Source: Paraphysomonas bandaiensis (Eukaryota; Protista; Chrysophyceae). Taken from it: DNA of 64,000 nucleotides. The DNA lies in contig CBFFRP010000431.1 in NCBI GenBank assembly GCA_965644295.1, positions 62,001-126,000 on the forward strand, written 5' to 3'. The notes under the pieces were generated by a model, which was not told where the DNA came from, ran no database searches, and was given only the letters and a program-made list of their open reading frames with translations. Position 1 is the stretch's first letter; every line of letters begins with the position of its first letter. Below, one piece after another: positions 3,496 through 55,349 of the stretch. The position numbers and the translations under genes were made by a program.

Positions 3496-6400
3496 TTACA
3501 GCATGGATGCTCGAAATCGAAAGACAACGTACGCCAATAATACATATGACACCGTGACCAAACACAGCATGCCAATGGTAAACTGTTTGTTACCGTTATT
3601 ATCTTCATTATACGTCATCTCGTAGGCTTCAATGACCTCTTCGCCATGTGTATAAGGACATACAGCACTATCACAATCAAAAGATTCGCCATTGAAGACG
3701 TAATTTGCCAGCAACACACTCCCCCATTTCATCGGAGAGAAATACGACACATATTGCAGAATGAGGGGTATGTTAAGAGAGATAAACCCCGCAAGAGTAC
3801 AGAATATTGCTAATACAACACTCATCATATCAACTGCAACACCACTTTCTTTGAAAATACTAAATGCCATGACTCCCATTGCCTCACCATTTACAATGTA
3901 ACATATCACAGTGAGGAATATGTGCCAGTATGCCTCGGGTGTGGGTTGCAACTTTATCACATATCCCGTAAGAGCGGATATGATAAATGCCAAAGTGATG
4001 ATGAAAGGCACACTTTGTAGGGCATAGGATATAAAAAATGCGCTAGCGGAGTACCCGCCACTTGTATACTCTCGGTAAAACACATCTCTCTGCTCCGGAA
4101 AAGATGCGATACTCACGAGCATTCCAATAAATCCCAGAGCAGTCAGCTCGTACAGACATCCGATTCGGTTCTGAATGGACTCCTGGGAATGATCCAATGG
4201 AGCATAAAAGAGACAGAGTATTAGTGCCAAACTAAGAGCCTGAAATACACGATCCACACAACTCAAAGGCTGTCGGAACAAGTTCTTATAGGCCCTGCTA
4301 AGAAGCAAAGGTAGTGTGTATACGATAGATTTATCGTGAATCTCAGGGTACTCGTGAGTATCCTGACTTCCTGCATCACTTCCCGAATTCCTTCTAACTG
4401 ACTTTTTATAAGCTTTTACAAGCTTTTTCCTTCTTTTCCTTGTTTTCTTTTCTTTTTTCTCACTAGTGAAGTTTATAGATGATGTGTCTATTATAAAATC
4501 TGCAGGGTTTGAAAACTCTGGACACTTATATCCAAGATTTTCAAAGTGTTTCAAGAGATTCTGTGAGCTCCCCGACCATATGAGCTCTCCCTTGGATAGC
4601 AAAATGATATCATCAAATTGATTGTATATATCATATCGAGGCTGGTGAATGGTCAGCGCCACGGCTTTACCATCTGTGTGTGCGAGCTCACGAAGAACTT
4701 TCACGATTCTCGCTGCAGTGAATGAGTCCAACCCAGTTGTAGGCTGCATATTAGCTTAGAATCAGGGACAAGGAAAATGAAGAGCTGAACTACACACCTC
4801 GTCAAGAAGGCACACCGAAGGATCTAGCAAAAGTTCACAACCTATGGACACACGCTTCATCTCTCCGCCACTAATACCCTTAACTTTTCCTCCTCCTATA
4901 TGCCAGAGCCATTAACTTGTGTTAATACAAGTACATAAAATTAAAAGGAAATTTCTGAATCCACTTACCTACATAAGTATCAAGGCAACTATCCAGCCCC
5001 AACCTATCAACAACAGAAGAAATCCTTTCTTGCTTAGTCTCGAGAGATAGTGAAGAGGACATATGTAGTTGAGCGTGGAACATCAGAGTCTCTCTGACAG
5101 TTAAACTCGGCATGTGCTTGTCAAACTGCTCCACCAAGCCAATGGTGTGTCGTACTTTCTTGTGTGGTAGAATTTCACCATTAAATAAAATTTGCCCCGT
5201 GCCATACATCCTACTTCGAAAAAACGTAGAAAGATAGTGACTGATACTCATTGATTCTTTAAATGGACGACGATTCCGTTGAGATATTACATTAAGCAGC
5301 GACGTCTTCCCACTACCACTGCCCCCCATTATAGCCACCATTCTTTTGTGATGAATTTTGCATGTAACATTCTTCAAAATATGTTTGATGCGGAACTTAT
5401 CCTCACCAGGTTTGGGATTAGAGACGCGCGACACTTTGAACAAGCAAATGTCCAAGACGTCAATATCCACTCTTGGTGTGGAGTGTACAAACTCAATTAC
5501 ATCGGAATTCGATACAGTGGTTAACGCAGGCGTGACGCTATCTTTCATGGCCTGTTTCACCAACTTCTTGTCATTCATTTTATTTGATACTGGTCGTATA
5601 CATATCATCAATCCCACCGCAAGTATATAGTACAAGATTATGATCGGCAACAAGACCGCCCACATAGTGTGATGGTCACGACTTCCTATATCTAGCGTTT
5701 CCAAGTAGTCATTTCCCTGATACACGACATCTACACAAGCTGAATTAGGAGACACATTGACACAAGTTGTAAATTCTCGATCAGAAATCTCATTTGCCAT
5801 TAAAATTTTGTATGCATATGTGAGAAAGCTGATGGTACTGATCCATCCTGCGTATGGGGGTACCGTCTTCGTATTCACGAGAAACCCAGAGGAAAGAGTA
5901 AAGAAAGTGAATTGGGTATTCGCAATGATGGAAGATATTGAAAACGAGCGATGACACGCCGCTGAAAACCACGCAATACCAAGCATGCCAAAACTAATGA
6001 CCGTGTTAGTTGTAAAGAAAATCCAGCCAGCTTCGCTTCCACTCCTCAGATTGCTTCCAAGGTATACAGGAAGGCAGTACAAAATCGAATGCAGCACCAG
6101 TATAGGACACACCGACAACATTTGAGCAGTGAAGAAGGCAGAATGTGAATAAATATGATCCAAACGCTCGCGATCAAAGAACTTCAACTCATCTGCGAGG
6201 TCTTTGACTAGTGTGATCATAAGCAAATAGGGACCCAGTGAGAGTAGCACATACATTAACCCCGCTCGGGACAGTAAGTCTGTGTAGGAATCTTCCAGCT
6301 GCCAAAATATAAAACATATAATAAGGCCAATTACAAGGGCTTGGGCCATCATGCCAATAAAATTCGATTTATTTCGAGTTCTCGCTAATAAAAATCGTTG

Positions 6401-48709: not shown

Positions 48710-49848
48710 ATGAGAACCTCAATTCATTCTCCTTATGCTGGTACGAGATTATATTTTTCAAGTTATGCATTGATGTGGGTATGTAGATTGCGACTCTCCG
48801 ATTGCTGCGGCAAAGAGACCTCATTCATGTATAACAGGTATTTGACTCTATAAAAGTTGTTATTATCACTTTTAATGATATTTATATTTAGAAAAAGAGA
48901 AATCTTTTGCGTCGCCGACACAGCGAATTCGTACTCTGATCTCAGCAGAATTTGATGATATAGAGTACGTAATATATGTAGGGACCCTCTGTTTAATATA
49001 ACACTGAGTGTGGCAGAGAAAACGACGACCCAACATCATTATTTTCTCCAAGTCTGTCACAACCAGATATATTTATTGCCTGCCAGGAGACGCTAGAAGC
49101 AGAACAGTGTGTTGAAGAGGAGGACGCCAGCGACGATGATTCGGAAACCTTTGATCCCTATTTGTTTATGTTCACGCTACCCCCCCATTCCACTGTAGCA
49201 ATTCAAGGAAAGCTCTGTTTATCACCACCTACGAATTATCACCAAAAGTCGCTAGTGTTAGACTTAGACGAAACACTTGTACACTGTACTGTCGAGCCGA
49301 TCCCAAACCCTGATTTCATTTTTCCTGTTACATTTAACTCTGTCTGTTATCAAGTGTATGCTAGAAAGCGCCCATTTGTTGACTACTTTCTGGAATCAGT
49401 TTCGAAAGAGTTCGAGGTCATAATTTTCACGGCATCGCAACAGGTGTATGCCGATAAGCTGTTGGATTTGTTGGACCCCGAAAACAAATATTTCTCAAGC
49501 AGACTTTTCAGAGAAGCGTGTCTTGACGTTAGCGGAAACTTCATTAAAGATTTAAGTGTGCTGAACCGAGATTTATCAAAGGTTTGTATATTTATTCTGA
49601 TATGCAATTGTTGCACTGACTTAATACTACAGACTGTTTTGGTCGACAATTCGCCCTACGCGTATGGGTATCAGATTGATAATGGCATTCCAATCGAGAG
49701 CTGGTTTGATGATGATGAAGACACGGAACTGTTGAAGCTCGTCGGCTTTTTGCGGCAGTTACATTCTGCACCTGATGTTCGAAAACTGTTGCGAGACCGG
49801 TTTAAGACCTTCAAGTTAGTAGAAATGGCGGGCAGTGTGCATTTTTAG
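48710..49848 (+). CDS. CTD small phosphatase-like (NIF/FCP1 HAD family); 5' end uncertain
   Basis: LVLDLDETLVH, KRPFV, FTASQQVYAD, LFREAC, KDLSVL, LVDNSP, NGIPIESW. Confidence 0.9.
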
Positions 49849-50303
49849 CAGTTTTGGTATACCTTTTATGCTTACTATCTGCGACATATAATGCTATCTA
49901 GTACCCTATTTCGAAAAGTAAAATACCTTTCACGCATTTGTTGTGAATGAAATTGTTAGTAACTGAAGTGAAAGAGTGAAATCGTAAATAATGTAATATT
50001 ATGACGACTAGCTACTACCTTGCACGAAACCCCATGTATGATGTACTTTGTAGATATAGAGCGATAAAGTAGCGTCTATACTACAGCTAGTATGGTGCAG
50101 TACTTTGCAAATTAATTTGCCAACGAGCTATATTGTTAAATTTAAAAGGAAAATATATCTTAGATATATAGTATAAGAGTTCGAATGCCAGCTTTAGAAT
50201 GCAAACAGCAGTGAAAATCAGAAAATTTTGTAATAAACATGAATTTAAAAGTTAAATAACTTCACACATACATAAATGACTTACTATGACCGGTCTAAGC
50301 GGC

Positions 50304-53300
50304 TCAAAGAAATTTTTCTATTTCAGTATAAATTGGTCCATAGGTACCCGCTCGCCCGTAGCAAATATGACCAATCGAGGTTAGCTCCCATCTGGAGCCT
50401 ACAGACGATCTCTGCAACTTACACATAATAACGGCCGTCTTGTCACCGGTGTTCTGCTCCTCCAACTGGTATCGACACATCTCTGTGTCACTCTCAACAT
50501 CATGCAGATGCGCGGATGGCTGAGATATCTCCTTTAAAGAAGTTGTCCACGCAGACACAGTAAAAAATAAAGATCCAACTATGCTAGGAAGCTTTTTAAA
50601 GTCTATGTCAATGGTGTGCTGTCCGATTCCAGTATCACTATCAACAACATCCCCACTATGTACCACCGGAGCGGATCTGTTCAGCCCACTACCATTTCCA
50701 TTATCCCATGATGTATGACAGTAGTCAACTTTCCCAAGATTCTTCCCATGAAAGTCGAAAATAAGGCAGGAAGCATCTAAGAATATAGTATGACCGTCGA
50801 ATCTCCACTTTTCAATCATTCGAATTCGTCTAAGGTTTGGAGCAGCAGAATAAGTCTCACCTTTCAGCAAAATTCTTGAAACTCCTGACCGCATGACGTT
50901 CTGAAAGACAGTATCTCGAGAATGGTATCCTTTCTTGAGAGAATTTTTAACTGCTGATTCTAACACAGAAAGAAGCTGGGGTTTAGATGGAAGAGGGATA
51001 CCAGATATGGCAAAGAACTGAGGCCACGATTCAAGATTTAGTATAGATTCAACAGCATTTTGCCACTTTCGACGAATGTATAGAGGAGGGCGACCTTGGA
51101 AAGTGTCATATCGGTCGATACAATCATCTAGCTTGTTCCTAGAGCCCCCCCCTCTCACCAAGAGAGTGAGAAACACCGCATGGAAAAGAGTGAGGCGCAT
51201 GGCGACCTTCTGTACAGCAAAGTACTTATCTAATCTGCTTTCGTCTCCATGAATAACAGTGGCAAGAGAAGGATCCCGTGAGCATGCCCACAAAACGGAC
51301 CGATCAAACGACTCCTTGATATATGCCATCGCTATTGAACTCCACGAGTAAGTGTCACTAACCGAGAGTAGAGTTAACAGTTCACCCAACGACGGTGTGT
51401 ACTGCTTCACGCGTTTATCTGGTCTTCTCGCAAAGTCATCAAGTCTGCGCCTCACGATTATTCGAAGCTGAGGAAAACTGTCGACTAAAGCAAGCAACAG
51501 ACGGTGGAGTTGGCAGTATCCAGTTAAAGTTACATCTGATACTGCTATACCCTTATCCATCAAGAGCACCACTTGGGTGTTCATCATTTTCGTCAGAAGA
51601 AAGAGTGCCATCTCTGGATCACTGTGAGGAGTCCACGCCGGCTCAATGTTGTCTGCTTTATCCTGTTTGAGATATCTATGAGACTCGTGGCGGCGTTGTT
51701 GCTGTTGGCGATGAGGCCGAGTGTTCAATGTACCCTCGGTGACAATTTTTCGACAAGTGCTTAGGAGCGGTTTCAGAGCCCTAGTAAAGTGTTCCTCATC
51801 AATATATATCGGTAAAAAGCTGGAGAACTTCTCTCCCCAGACAGTTCGTCTCACTCCCTGAGTTTTGTAGGACTCCAAACTCAGAATATCGAAAGTAGAG
51901 GTAACGTAATCCAAACATCCAGTCTTTGGATTCGTGGTGTATATGATGGGAAATCCTAGGACTGCTTCTGATTTAGTGCTGAACGAGTGAAAGCAAGTAA
52001 GGTCCTGCGCGAGACAATTGGCCTCAAGCATATAGGCAGTCCTCCACGAGTACGTCGGTCCACTAGGAGATAGGGAAGACCTCGGGTAACGAGTCTTGAA
52101 GAGAGTTCTCCAGACCACCCAATCATCTGTCATTGATGCGGTTCCACGACAAGCTATCCCCAACGCAAGGACATCAGCAACAGATAAATAGGAGATAACT
52201 GCTAATGAGGTATCTCGAGAGAGTGTCCGGAGCAGGCCCATATTTTGATCTGTAGCTCCCGCCAGCTCTTCACATCGCCAGCGTGATTTCCACTCTTCAT
52301 CTGTGTCCACGACAACATCCTCATCAACTATAGAAAGATCCGAAGGTATGTCAGAATTAGAAGATGAAATCTCAGTTGTTGGTTCTTCTGGTTTTGTTGA
52401 CTGTGCCAGAAGTTGTTTAGCGAGGCGGCGCTTCTGTCTACGGGCAAAGTTCTTATTTACAGGCGGCGACACGCCCTTGTGGGATGATAAATTGACCACG
52501 GCTTTCAAACATTCGGAGCACCTCCTACCCTCGCTTTTTGAGAGCTGAGAGCGCGAGAAGTACTTTTGCTTTAGCTTTCTTTGACATGAAGAACATGAGT
52601 ACTTTACCAGTTCAGATTCAGCTGCCTCGAGCATATTGTACGGATTACTTTGCTCCCCGTCGTCTGTGGTAAAGGAAAGTTTCACAGATTTGACTTTGTT
52701 AAAAGCACGGCGGCTGTTGACAGTAACCCACTGAGGCTCAAGAGCGCTTTCAGGGACAGACTGCTTCTCACTACCAGTGCTTACTGTTGAAGCCGACGAA
52801 TCAGAAGTTGGAGCCTTAACCTTCTGGGTATCGTCTTTTTCTTTCAATAGTTCAAGGCTGGACTTTTGTTGCTGTATACGCCTGGCAAGTATACGCGCCT
52901 GAAGCTTCTGTGCAGCTTCTCCAGATACCTCCACGGAAGGAAAAGCCACAGGAGCTGCTGATACTTCAAGGTCACTCGGGAAGGGAGGCGTGGGATGCAT
53001 ACGACTATGGCCGCAAGCGACACACTCATAGCTTGACGATTCTGTTACTGTACGAGAGATATTACCGCTAGAAACTTCCGTCGGTTGTCCCTTTGCAAGG
53101 ATGAAGGACGTCAGCTGAATTAAGATAGATCGGACTGAGAAGGCAGAAGACCAATACTGATAGGCCACAGTCATGGAGCCAATTGGAGGTGTTTCCAACA
53201 TATCCAGACAGACTTCCCACCTCATATTCCTTCTCTGGATGTTGAGGTGAGGGATGTACGAGCACATTTCAATGCGAGGAGGCATAGAGGGGTAGCCAGT

Positions 53301-53539
53301 AGGAAAAGTGACCACAAAATGAACTACGATGTCTTCGAAATCACTGTCCTCTGCTCCCTTAATGTTACCATGCCTAATCATGCGTCAGGTAAGGGTATTC
53401 ATATATGTATTGTATAAAGCACATACCATTCCTCAAGATTCTCTTCGTTTAATGGTGCAATAGTAATATTAGCAACCGGACAACGCATCACCTCTGCATA
53501 CTCTCTCATTAAACGAGATGTTCTCATCTGTTGGTGCAT
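50304..53539 (-). CDS. Ubiquitin-conjugating (E2) domain + Zn finger + F-box-like + uncharacterised helical domain + C-terminal TerD-like domain
   Basis: Exon 1 MHQQMRTSRLMREYAEV...NLEEW / exon 2 HGNI...FPTGYPSMPP...HLNI...VCLDML...WSSAFSVRSILIQL (E2). CSSC...FSRSQL...CSEC. LSRDTSLAVISYLSVADVLALGIACR...WRTLF. LDASC...HSGD...IDIDFKKLP (TerD). Confidence 0.85.
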
Positions 53540-54091
53540 TGATACTGATATATGCTAATACTTATGCGTCTTTAACGAAGTAACAAACAACAATATATTG
53601 TTGATTGTGATGATATATAAGTATCATATATTCACTTCTATCCACATACTTTTACATACTTTACTTTCCTGGAAAAAGAAAGCGAATTCCTTTATATGCA
53701 ATGAACAAAAGTAGAAGTGAGAATCGGCGCTCATAATCATGCATGCATCATTCCTTTCTATTCCACGGTATTCCTGACTTGTATTATGGACTACAGCTAC
53801 GTTGTACCAACAAAAGATACCATATCCATATCATATGGCATCACTGCAATTACAATACCGATGCCGGATGGGTATACTGTAACAGTTGGTACGTCGTAGT
53901 ATATACAACTCCCCATACATACAGAGGTATACATACATCTTCAATTGACGACATATACAGCAGTATACATATATATATAGATGGTGCGCATACAGCACGC
54001 AGCTCTCACGGCATGCATATATATGCATATAAGAATAGCAGTGAATATTAAGTTACAGTAACATGACACTTCTTCTTTACCTCTACTAACA

Positions 54092-55349
54092 ATGCTATCT
54101 AACTTAATATATATACTCCTTGCTTTATTTATATTGAGTATAGAGAATGTTGTATCAGAGAGAATGTGTGTGCTTAGCACTGTTGACTCACACGGTTTAG
54201 TATCTGAAATAGTCAAAGTACATTCTATTATTGAATCCACTAGAAATAAAGCAGATTTGTTTTTTGGGTTTGCTACTAAAGATCAAACAAATAAACAAAT
54301 ATTAGAAACTGCTTTAAAGGGATGTTTTGGTAATATATCAGCAGAGGTAAAGATACTTAACCAGCCACCGACTTTTAAGAAATATGTTGCTCCAAACCGC
54401 CCTGTAACTCAGTTGGCGAGAGTTATTCTACCTGAACACTTTCCGCAATGTGAAAAATTTATATACATCGACAGCGATGCTATTGGAAATATTGATATCG
54501 AGGAGGTTAGACTCCTTCACTCTAACAATATTTTCGTTGATGTGTTAGATATATCATAGGTGTTAAGTTTTCCACTGAAACGCATGAACGCAGAGGGAAG
54601 AATGGAAGATGTACACTCTGGCTATATTTTTGATTCGTGTCACTCGAACTATATTCATACTCAAAGACAGTTCAACATGTCTCACCCAGATGTAATTGAT
54701 ATGTTTGCCGCAAACAAAGGGTTCTATATAAATGCTGGTGTATGGATGTGCAACTCCAATCTGTGGATTAAACAAAATGTAACTGGGCAGATGCTGGAAT
54801 TCATGGAGCGCACATCTGTGGAGCCCTTATTCATTAAGCCATGGGACGACCAGTCTTTAGCTTACATGGTTTCTGGTAAAAACGCTGCGAAGTTACCGAA
54901 CACATTTAATATGCGCCGCCTTTGTAAGCATACGGTGTCTAATTTTGATAATGGAGCCAGAGGTGAGGCGATACTTAAAATATAATATATATTAAATAGA
55001 ATCTCAAAGTCTATGATTTGCAGGTTTTGTACATTTTGCTGGAACTTCAGCCAAACACTGCAACATAGTATCGTATCCTGCTTTTGCAGGAGCTGCCGGA
55101 TACTTTGCAGGTGTAGCGCTGTCGTTATCTCGCAAGTGTAATATATCCCCACAAATGTATTCTCAATGTGAGAAGCATATAAGACTTGTAGAAAGAATTA
55201 ACGCCAAGTTAAATCTTACTGACAGTCGGCGAATTGATGTTTACAAACAAGTGGATCCGGGTTATGGTAATTTCACGTGGCCAGGATTAATGAACTTTAC
55301 TTTTTTGGAGCCAGTTCTTGGCCGTTTTCATGAAAAACTAGGGTCGTAG
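54092..55349 (+). CDS. Glycosyltransferase family 8 protein (signal anchor, multi-exon)
   Basis: ARVILPEHFP...FIYIDSD (DxD), INAGV, DDQ, FN, LHFAG. Confidence 0.85.

What the first reader, a model, noticed from the sequence alone, without database searches (positions are those of the whole stretch)
50304..53539. Single-chain ubiquitylation module: E2 + Zn finger + F-box-like + TerD stress-sensor domain
Seen: one reading frame carries an E2 fold with its catalytic Cys (VCLDML, codon 53208-53210; HPN appears as HLN) and a small CxxCxH. It then has a CxxC...FSxSQL...CxxC Stc1-like Zn finger (about 52510-52595), an F-box-like helix set (about 52095-52240), an unnamed conserved-looking helical region (EEHF...KMMNTQVVLLM...GYCQLHRLL) and a C-terminal TerD-like domain (about 50304-50820). 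Established: TerD domains are mainly bacterial metal/Ca-binding components of the ter stress-response operons; E2s and F-box proteins normally act as separate SCF components. Inference: this could be a self-contained sensor-to-ubiquitin device, in which a TerD domain recognises a ligand or membrane stress and the fused E2/F-box modifies a target. I cannot check whether this architecture has already been described.
Basis: partly seen in the sequence, partly recalled or inferred. Interest (0 to 1): 0.8.

Follow-up and report, generated by a model that had tools for sequence, protein, structure and literature searches.

The report
E2 fused to UBR-type E3, TerD
This chrysophyte gene really does encode one long protein joining a ubiquitin-conjugating enzyme, an F-box and a bacterial-type TerD domain, and its unnamed middle part has the fold of the ubiquitin-ligase module of UBR4/UBR1; it belongs to a large, widespread, apparently unstudied eukaryotic family.

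Summary
A two-exon gene on the minus strand (ATG 53539 or 53527, 53-nt intron 53374-53426, stop 50304-50306) encodes a 1056/1060-aa protein. One spliced mRNA covers it in transcriptome contigs that match the window 99.4-100%. Pfam calls UQ_con and TerD above threshold. The F-box is sub-threshold for this protein alone but clear by family profile (Fbw7 F-box, E 3.4e-6) and by fold.

Yeast Ubr1's RING plus helical cap is second (Z 11.6). UBR4's C2HC zinc ligands are not kept, and no sequence-level match to UBR4 was found.

The E2 is UBE2G2/Ubc7-like and keeps its catalytic Cys, His and Asn.

The middle module defines a big family: 2464 clusters at 50% identity, in stramenopiles, Amoebozoa, chytrids and Ascomycota. 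It nearly always sits with the E2, often with the F-box, and with TerD in a large subset. Public members are named only hypothetical or "UBC core domain-containing".

My reading: a single-chain E2-E3 hybrid, with TerD as ligand- or substrate-binding end.

The architecture is already in databases; no open-access paper describes it.

The parts
53427..53539 (-). Exon 1. ATG at 53539 (MHQQ...) or 53527 (MRTS..., the start used by public protein P0001). Encodes E2 helix 1 and the first strands, ending in a split Trp codon.
   Evidence: transcript contigs.
53374..53426 (-). 53-nt GT..AG intron, phase 2.
   Evidence: The transcript contig L001 aligns to the window in two blocks that leave it out. Contigs of runs X1 and X2 also skip it, and the 24.7-kb DNA contig of X17 keeps it. 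The spliced CDS translates exactly to P0001.
50304..53373 (-). Exon 2, including the stop codon at 50304-50306.
53055..53527 (-). UBC/E2 core (residues 1-140, spanning the intron). Closest solved relative is UBE2G2/Ubc7.
   Evidence: Pfam UQ_con E 2.9e-12. PDB UBE2G2 E 5.9e-16. Foldseek 2cyx E 1.2e-6, 32% identity.
53208..53210 (-). Catalytic Cys89 codon (VCLDML). H76 is at 53247-53249 and N78 at 53241-53243 (HLN in place of HPN).
   Evidence: Conservation in 35 full-length members: Cys 29/35, His 34/35, Asn 31/35.
53007..53024 (-). E2-tail motif C151-x2-C154-x-H156, conserved across the family and in a confidently modelled segment (residues 141-217).
   Evidence: Conserved in 31-34 of 35 members, with and without TerD. 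pLDDT 88-95 in the full-length model.
52509..52595 (-). C4 zinc-finger-like insert CxxC..FSxSQL..CxxC (residues 294-322), Stc1-like. Restricted to one lineage.
   Evidence: Pfam Stc1 E 7.7e-4, below cut-off. Motif found in 25 of 181 family proteins. pLDDT 85-89.
52050..52262 (-). F-box (residues about 405-475).
   Evidence: Pfam F-box-like E 1.9e-3. Family profile against the Fbw7 F-box, E 3.4e-6. Fold Z 6-7 to FBXO31, beta-TrCP, Fbw7 and Cdc4 F-boxes.
51750..51995 (-). RING-like (hemiRING-like) subdomain, residues 494-575. Carries the invariant C494 (51993-51995) and H562 (51789-51791).
   Evidence: Model residues 100-170 align to the UBR4 hemiRING and, weakly, to RNF4, BIRC7 and Bre1 RINGs. 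Conservation.
50937..51620 (-). UZI-like helical bundle, residues 619-846 (12 helices listed by DSSP in the model). It follows a disordered loop at 599-609.
   Evidence: VIA-align Z 20.0 to 8b5w over model 100-452 against chain 4839-5183. Z 11.6 to yeast Ubr1 chain 1218-1641. Secondary structure.
50367..50846 (-). TerD domain (Pfam match, residues 877-1036). The fold runs on to the C-terminus at 50307.
   Evidence: Pfam TerD E 2e-12. PDB 2kxt E 4.1e-5. Foldseek 3ibz E 9.9e-9, TM 0.72.
50124..53598 (-). Extent of the mRNA seen in transcriptome contigs (5' UTR to at least 53598, 3' UTR to about 50124-50182).

Best explanation
The gene encodes a single-chain E2-E3 hybrid of the ubiquitin system. 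It belongs to a large, uncharacterised eukaryotic family.

Domain order:
1. A UBE2G2/Ubc7-like E2 with its catalytic Cys.
2. A conserved CxxCxH tail.
3. In this lineage only, a C4 zinc finger.
4. An F-box.
5. A RING-like plus helical UZI module with the fold of the E3 module of UBR4/UBR1.
6. A C-terminal TerD beta-sandwich.

Proposed mechanism (all steps inferred):
- E1 loads ubiquitin onto Cys89.
- The RING-like/UZI module holds and activates the tethered E2~Ub, in cis or across a dimer, as the UBR4 module does for UBE2A.
- The F-box recruits Skp1, and possibly a cullin scaffold.
- The TerD domain sits where F-box proteins carry their substrate receptor. It binds the substrate or a small ligand (Ca2+ or a nucleotide-like molecule) that gates activity.

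Shown here: the gene structure, the single transcript, the domain identities and folds, the conservation of catalytic and Cys/His residues, and the co-occurrence of the E2 with the RING-like/UZI module across the family.
For: Gene and transcript:
- Spliced contigs from several runs cover the whole ORF. The 53-nt intron is absent from two of them and kept in a DNA contig.

E2:
- Pfam UQ_con above cut-off.
- UBE2G2 is the best solved relative, E 5.9e-16, including the loop insertion after the Cys.
- H76, N78 and C89 are conserved in 34, 31 and 29 of 35 full-length members.

F-box:
- Family profile E 3.4e-6 to the Fbw7 F-box. Fold Z 6-7.

Middle module:
- AF2 model with pLDDT 85.
- Foldseek E 4.8e-5 to UBR4 8b5w.
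- VIA-align Z 20.0, 297 of 346 residues aligned. The next unrelated hit to this part is Z about 4.4.
- An exhaustive search again puts UBR4 first (Z 19.6) and yeast Ubr1's RING plus cap second (Z 11.6). Isolated RING domains match model residues 100-170.

Co-occurrence:
- Of 181 family proteins, 94 carry E2 plus the middle module, and 53 of those also carry TerD. Most of the rest look like truncated gene models.

TerD:
- Pfam above cut-off. Solved TerD structures at E 1e-8 to 3e-7, TM about 0.7.

Whole chain:
- The full-length model has pTM 0.75, which fits a packed multidomain particle.
- The C494 loop rises from pLDDT about 55 in the isolated model to about 90 in the full-length model.
Against: - No biochemical data exist for any member.
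- UBR4's zinc ligands (CxxC...HxxC; PMC10873205) are not conserved. Only C494 and H562 are invariant, so E2 binding by this module is unproven.
- No sequence-level link to UBR4 was found: Pfam PF13764 is not hit by any of 30 members, and the PDB profile search finds only F-boxes.
- The fused E2 resembles UBE2G2 more than UBE2A/Rad6, the E2 partner of UBR4 and Ubr1.
- This protein's F-box reads LSRD where F-boxes usually have LP (other family members read LPRD), and it is below the Pfam cut-off on its own.
- The acidic stretch that aligns to the TerD Ca-binding segment is replaced.
- 6 of 35 members lack the Cys at the aligned position.
Confidence: 0.6

Rival explanations
1. Conventional SCF substrate receptor with a tethered E2. 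The F-box brings Skp1-Cul1-Rbx1, Rbx1 is the real RING, and the fused Ubc7/Cdc34-like E2 is simply kept close. The middle module and TerD together form the substrate-binding region and have no E3 activity of their own.
For: - The F-box is supported by profile and fold.
- The E2 is nearest to the UBE2G/Ubc7 group, which from general knowledge is the group nearest Cdc34, the usual SCF E2.
- The RING-like part lacks the C2HC zinc ligand set.
Against: - 22 of 181 family proteins show E2 plus the middle module with no detectable F-box, so the constant pairing is E2 with the middle module, not E2 with the F-box.
- The middle module matches a proven E2-binding E3 module over its whole length at Z about 20.
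Confidence: 0.2
2. A mainly non-catalytic scaffold or sensor. The E2 and RING-like parts are degenerate interaction domains (UEV-like and zinc-less), and the protein acts as a TerD-dependent adaptor rather than as an enzyme.
For: - HPN reads HLN in this protein.
- The zinc ligands of the hemiRING are not conserved.
- 6 of 35 members have LSLWDC or LALWDC in place of VCLDML.
Against: - Cys89, His76 and Asn78 are conserved in most members, including this one.
- The proline of HPN varies within the family while His and Asn stay fixed, the pattern expected of an active E2.
Confidence: 0.12
3. Artefact: two or more neighbouring genes read through as one ORF, or a chimeric assembly.
For: None found. 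The only complication is that the E2 N-terminus is in a separate exon.
Against: - Independent spliced contigs of 3.3-3.4 kb from different runs cover the ORF end to end.
- A 24.7-kb DNA contig is collinear with the window.
- The same architecture recurs in distant eukaryotes.
Confidence: 0.01

Closest known systems
UBR4 hemiRING-UZI E3 module with its E2 UBE2A (PDB 8B5W, 8BTL; PMC10873205), and the RING plus cap helical domain of yeast Ubr1 (PDB 7MEY)
   Same: Both have a RING-like beta/alpha subdomain followed by a bundle of about 11 helices, in the same order and over the whole module. Z is 20 to UBR4 and 11.6 to Ubr1. In both cases the module works, or is proposed to work, with a UBC-fold E2.
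   Different: - There is no detectable sequence similarity.
- UBR4's C2HC zinc ligands are not conserved.
- There is no UBR box or giant scaffold.
- The E2 is part of the same chain and is UBE2G2-like rather than Rad6-like.
- An F-box precedes the module and a TerD domain follows it.
E2-E3 hybrid enzymes UBE2O and BIRC6 (general knowledge, not tested here)
   Same: These are large single chains in which a UBC domain is combined with substrate-binding and E3-like functions.
   Different: They carry the UBC domain in the middle or at the C-terminus, with unrelated flanking domains. Neither is known to me to have an F-box, a UBR-type RING-UZI module or a TerD domain.
SCF F-box substrate receptors working with Cdc34/UBE2R or UBE2G1 (general knowledge)
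   Same: The F-box lies upstream of the presumed recognition region, and the E2 belongs to the related Ubc7/UBE2G group.
   Different: In SCF the E2, the RING (Rbx1) and the F-box protein are separate polypeptides. Here an E2 and a RING-like module are fused to the F-box.
Bacterial TerD proteins (Klebsiella TerD 2KXT, Streptomyces 3IBZ) and the Dictyostelium cAMP-binding TerD homologue (cited in PMC8123226)
   Same: The beta-sandwich fold and core motifs are shared: LDAS, and H-x-G-D.
   Different: - Here TerD is the C-terminal domain of a ubiquitin-system enzyme, not a stand-alone protein of a ter operon.
- The acidic GDGDDE-type stretch is replaced by a family-specific G-x-H-T.

Membership tests
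UBC/E2 (Pfam PF00179) | Sequence match to the UBC core above the curated cut-off | tested here: met
   46.8 bits against a cut-off of 27, E 2.9e-12, on exon 2 alone. 215 PDB E2 sequences match at E up to 1e-3.
UBC/E2 (Pfam PF00179) | Catalytic Cys and the HPN motif | tested here: met
   C89 is present, and H76 and N78 are present with Pro replaced by Leu. Family conservation is 29/35, 34/35 and 31/35.
UBC/E2 (Pfam PF00179) | E1-dependent ubiquitin thioester | not testable with these tools
   Needs a biochemical assay.
UBE2G/Ubc7-type E2 | Closest to UBE2G2/Ubc7, with a loop insertion after the active-site Cys | tested here: met
   UBE2G2 is the best PDB hit at E 5.9e-16, about 4-5 orders of magnitude better than UBE2D. 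The insertion aligns with a single short gap. Foldseek gives 32% identity. The acidic character of the loop is not kept.
F-box (Pfam PF12937/PF00646) | Sequence match above the curated cut-off | tested here: not met
   18.4 bits against a cut-off of 24.3 for this protein alone. Several homologues carry precomputed PF12937, and the family profile hits the Fbw7 F-box at E 3.4e-6.
F-box (Pfam PF12937/PF00646) | Three-helix F-box fold | tested here: met
   Z 6-7, about 75 residues aligned, to FBXO31, beta-TrCP, Fbw7 and Cdc4 in Skp1 complexes.
F-box (Pfam PF12937/PF00646) | Skp1 binding | not testable with these tools
   Needs a pull-down.
UBR4-type hemiRING-UZI E3 module (Pfam PF13764) | Overall fold: RING-like subdomain plus a UZI bundle of about 11 helices | tested here: met
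   Z 20.0, rmsd 4.2, 297 of 346 residues. Z 19.6 in the exhaustive search, with Ubr1 second at 11.6. Foldseek E 4.8e-5.
UBR4-type hemiRING-UZI E3 module (Pfam PF13764) | Sequence match to PF13764 | tested here: not met
   No hit at E up to 1 for this protein or for any of 30 family members. The PDB profile search does not reach 8B5W.
UBR4-type hemiRING-UZI E3 module (Pfam PF13764) | C2HC zinc site (CxxC ... HxxC) | tested here: not met
   Only C494 and H562 are invariant. Position 496 is H in 20/35 and position 559 is D in 13/35. The correspondence to UBR4 residues was judged from alignment ranges, not from coordinates.
UBR4-type hemiRING-UZI E3 module (Pfam PF13764) | Binds and activates an E2~Ub | not testable with these tools
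   Inferred only from the constant fusion with an E2.
TerD (Pfam PF02342) | Sequence match above the curated cut-off, and the fold | tested here: met
   47.4 bits against a cut-off of 25.3. 2kxt E 4.1e-5. Foldseek 3ibz E 9.9e-9, TM 0.72.
TerD (Pfam PF02342) | Acid-rich Ca2+-binding stretch of Klebsiella TerD (GDN..GDGDDE; the motif itself is recalled from memory of Pan et al. 2011) | tested here: not met
   HTGDNRTGEGDGDDES of 2kxt aligns to HSGDVVDSDTGIGQHT. The family keeps H939, G941 and D942, then G951-x-H953.
Stc1 zinc finger (Pfam PF12898) | Sequence match above the curated cut-off | tested here: not met
   20.4 bits against a cut-off of 24.8, and only the last 38 profile positions match. 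The four Cys are present.

The most novel reading that the evidence does not exclude
This is a widespread, never-studied class of autonomous ubiquitin enzymes in which a UBR-type RING-UZI E3 module has been fused to its own E2.

The module has lost half of its zinc site. The missing half may be supplied in trans by the conserved CxxC(xH) tail of the E2: C151, C154, C494 and H562 would give the same 3 Cys + 1 His set as UBR4's site. That would lock E2 and E3 together.

A bacterial-type TerD domain would make the enzyme answer to Ca2+ or a nucleotide-like signal. That would link a ter-type stress or defence sensor to ubiquitylation in eukaryotes.
Probability: 0.25. Interest if true: 0.85.

Novelty: new variant of a known kind. 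Interest (0 to 1): 0.62.

Why it matters
E2-E3 hybrids are rare and mechanistically informative. The hemiRING-UZI module was only recognised in 2024, and only inside giant N-degron ligases.

Finding the same fold fused to an E2, usually with an F-box as well, in thousands of protist and fungal proteins would do three things:
- It would widen the known range of RING-related E3 modules.
- It would provide a compact natural E2-E3 pair for structural and biochemical work.
- It would give the eukaryotic TerD domain, whose ligand is still debated, a concrete output (ubiquitylation) that can be assayed.

Members exist in organisms that can be cultured (Orbilia/Arthrobotrys, chytrids, Ectocarpus, diatoms), so the hypothesis can be tested directly.

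Tried and rejected
- Pfam on the middle region, alone and for 30 family members, gave nothing: no PF13764 and no PF24467.
- A language-model feature search suggested FBXO47 ARM repeats at 0.81-0.83, below the tool's 0.9 trust level. Neither Pfam nor the fold searches supported this, so I dropped it.
- A sequence-profile search of PDB with the F-box-plus-middle profile reached only F-boxes, not UBR4. The UBR link therefore rests on predicted fold alone.
- I could not run a profile-profile comparison against UBR4, because no UBR4 sequence was available from a tool.
- Literature searches found nothing on this architecture: TerD + F-box + ubiquitin-conjugating, TerD + F-box, UQ_con/TerD/F-box-like, and UBC core/F-box/E2-E3 hybrid.
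- The Ter-system review by Anantharaman, Iyer and Aravind 2012 (PMC4104200) is not held. A brief mention of the architecture there cannot be excluded.
- The trans zinc-site idea could not be tested, because model coordinates and PAE are not exposed.
- The gene-fusion artefact was rejected by the transcript data.
Full report
**Gene structure and expression**

The long minus-strand ORF 50304-53381 begins inside the UBC profile. The missing E2 N-terminus lies upstream in a small ORF starting at 53539, MHQQMRTSRLMREYAEV...NLEEW. A 53-nt GT..AG intron (53374-53426) follows it.

Joining 53527..53427 to 53373..50304 gives a translation identical to public protein P0001, 1056 aa.

P0001 sits on a 3364-nt JGI contig that matches the window at 100% over exon 2 and 99.4% (one mismatch) over exon 1, and lacks the intron.

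Laying contigs of four public runs on the region gave this picture:
- Two transcriptome-like contigs (3258 and 3394 nt) skip exactly those 53 bases.
- A 24.7-kb DNA contig keeps them.
- A poly-A marine metatranscriptome covers most of the gene.

One mRNA, about 50124-53598, therefore covers everything.

The cluster of P0001 contains an MMETSP1103 peptide with taxon id 36769, *Paraphysomonas*, a chrysophyte stramenopile.

| Feature | Residues | Evidence |
|---|---|---|
| UQ_con | 1-140 | Pfam 46.8 bits, cut-off 27 |
| TerD | 877-1036 | Pfam 47.4 bits, cut-off 25.3 |
| Stc1-like finger | 294-322 | Pfam E 7.7e-4, below cut-off |
| F-box-like | about 405-475 | Pfam E 1.9e-3, below cut-off |

- **F-box.** It is real at family level. 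A profile of 31 homologues hits the Fbw7 F-box at E 3.4e-6. The predicted fold aligns to F-boxes in Skp1 complexes at Z 6-7.
- **Zinc finger.** The CxxC..FSxSQL..CxxC finger is modelled with pLDDT 85-89. It occurs in only 25 of 181 family proteins, so it is a lineage-specific insert.
- **E2.** It is closest to UBE2G2/Ubc7 (E 5.9e-16, 32% identity), including the loop insertion after the active-site Cys. In 35 full-length members H76, N78 and C89 are kept in 34, 31 and 29. Only the Pro of HPN varies.
- **E2 tail.** It lies in a confidently modelled tail.
- **TerD.** The domain matches solved TerD structures: 2kxt by sequence (E 4.1e-5) and 3ibz by fold (E 9.9e-9, TM 0.72). The acid-rich stretch of Klebsiella TerD aligns to a non-acidic, family-specific G-x-H-T. 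Classical two-site Ca2+ binding should not be assumed.

**The unnamed middle region**

Pfam finds nothing there, in this protein or in 30 relatives. An AlphaFold2 model of residues 395-860, built on 31 homologues, has mean pLDDT 85. Fold searches with it gave:

| Search | Top result for this region |
|---|---|
| Foldseek, PDB | only two hits at E ≤ 0.001, both the human UBR4 E3 module: 8b5w E 4.8e-5 and 8btl |
| VIA-align re-alignment | Z 20.0, rmsd 4.2 Å, 297 of 346 residues, model 100-452 on chain 4839-5183; next hit to this part Z 4.4 |
| Exhaustive search, 48,161 PDB representatives | UBR4 first (Z 19.6), yeast Ubr1 RING plus cap helical domain second (Z 11.6, 265 residues) |
| Isolated RINGs (RNF4, BIRC7, Bre1) | Z 3.5-3.9 on model residues 100-170 |
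| ESM Atlas | a PF13764 cluster at TM 0.64, normalised by the match |

According to PMC10873205, the UBR4 module is a hemiRING with one C2HC zinc site plus an 11-helix UZI bundle. It binds UBE2A and modestly activates E2~Ub. UBR1-3 are predicted to carry RING-UZI modules.

In the present family only C494 and H562 are invariant in the RING-like part. The other two ligand positions vary, so the zinc site is degenerate or built differently.

**A family, not a one-off**

The word search found 32 relatives. These include *Ectocarpus fasciculatus*, *Planoprotostelium fungivorum* PROFUN_04561, *Protostelium* and diatoms.

A profile of the middle module alone matches 2464 representative clusters at E ≤ 1e-3, and 725 at E ≤ 1e-30.

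I scored the 181 proteins in hand with my own HMMs:

| Architecture | Count |
|---|---|
| E2+(ZnF)+F-box+mid+TerD | 52 |
| F-box+mid+TerD | 47 |
| E2+mid | 22 |
| mid alone | 21 |
| E2+F-box+mid | 19 |
| mid+TerD | 13 |
| F-box+mid | 6 |
| E2+mid+TerD | 1 |

Many of the proteins without an E2 look like gene models missing N-terminal exons; I did not check this.

Named members are chytrids (*Rhizophlyctis*, *Geranomyces*, labelled "Ubiquitin-conjugating enzyme E2 2"), *Orbilia oligospora*/*Arthrobotrys* ("UBC core domain-containing protein"), *Mastigamoeba*, and *Seminavis*.

The constant partnership is the E2 with the RING-like/UZI module. TerD is a frequent but dispensable addition.

**Interpretation**

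The simplest reading is a single-chain E2-E3 hybrid. The tethered Ubc7-like E2 would be held by its own UBR-type E3 module. The F-box would add Skp1, and perhaps a cullin. TerD sits where F-box proteins carry their substrate receptor, and would bind a substrate or a small ligand.

Two observations are consistent with the domains packing into one particle, though neither shows it:
- The full-length model has pTM 0.75 despite about 140 disordered residues.
- The loop around C494 goes from pLDDT about 55 in the isolated model to about 90 in the full-length model. This could reflect contact with another part of the chain, possibly the conserved E2 tail. The two models also used different alignments, which may account for some of the change.

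The idea that C151/C154 of the tail complete a 3 Cys + 1 His zinc site with C494 and H562 is speculation. I could not test it without coordinates.

**Novelty**

The architecture is present, unannotated, in public protein sets. No open-access paper I could search mentions TerD together with an F-box or an E2. The 2012 Ter-system review could not be read. As far as I could check, the link of the middle domain to the UBR4/UBR1 E3 module is new.

I rate the finding a new variant of a known kind (E2-E3 hybrids and UBR-type RING-UZI modules), of solid but not extreme interest.

Noticed in passing
window 49162-49848 (+): The neighbouring gene encodes an NIF/FCP1-like CTD phosphatase (Pfam NIF E 2.3e-54, full profile).
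   Followed up: no
window 54092-54985 (+): A glycosyltransferase family 8 match is split over two adjacent same-frame ORFs (54092-54559 and 54560-54985), separated by one stop codon. This could be an intron carrying a stop, or a disrupted gene.
   Followed up: no
alignment A4 (family members P0060, P0084, P0092, P0113, P0137, P0153): Six of 35 full-length family members read LSLWDC or LALWDC instead of VCLDML and lack the loop insertion. Either the catalytic Cys has moved by a few residues or these are inactive E2-like paralogues.
   Followed up: partly
P0001 residues 485-504 (window about 51965-52022): The loop holding the invariant C494 is poorly modelled (pLDDT about 55) when residues 395-860 are folded alone. 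It is confident (about 90) in the full-length model, which hints at contact with a part outside that range.
   Followed up: partly
window 50627-53513: Contigs from other runs differ from the window at 6 to 12 scattered single-base positions across the gene. This indicates closely related strains in culture and in marine poly-A metatranscriptomes.
   Followed up: no
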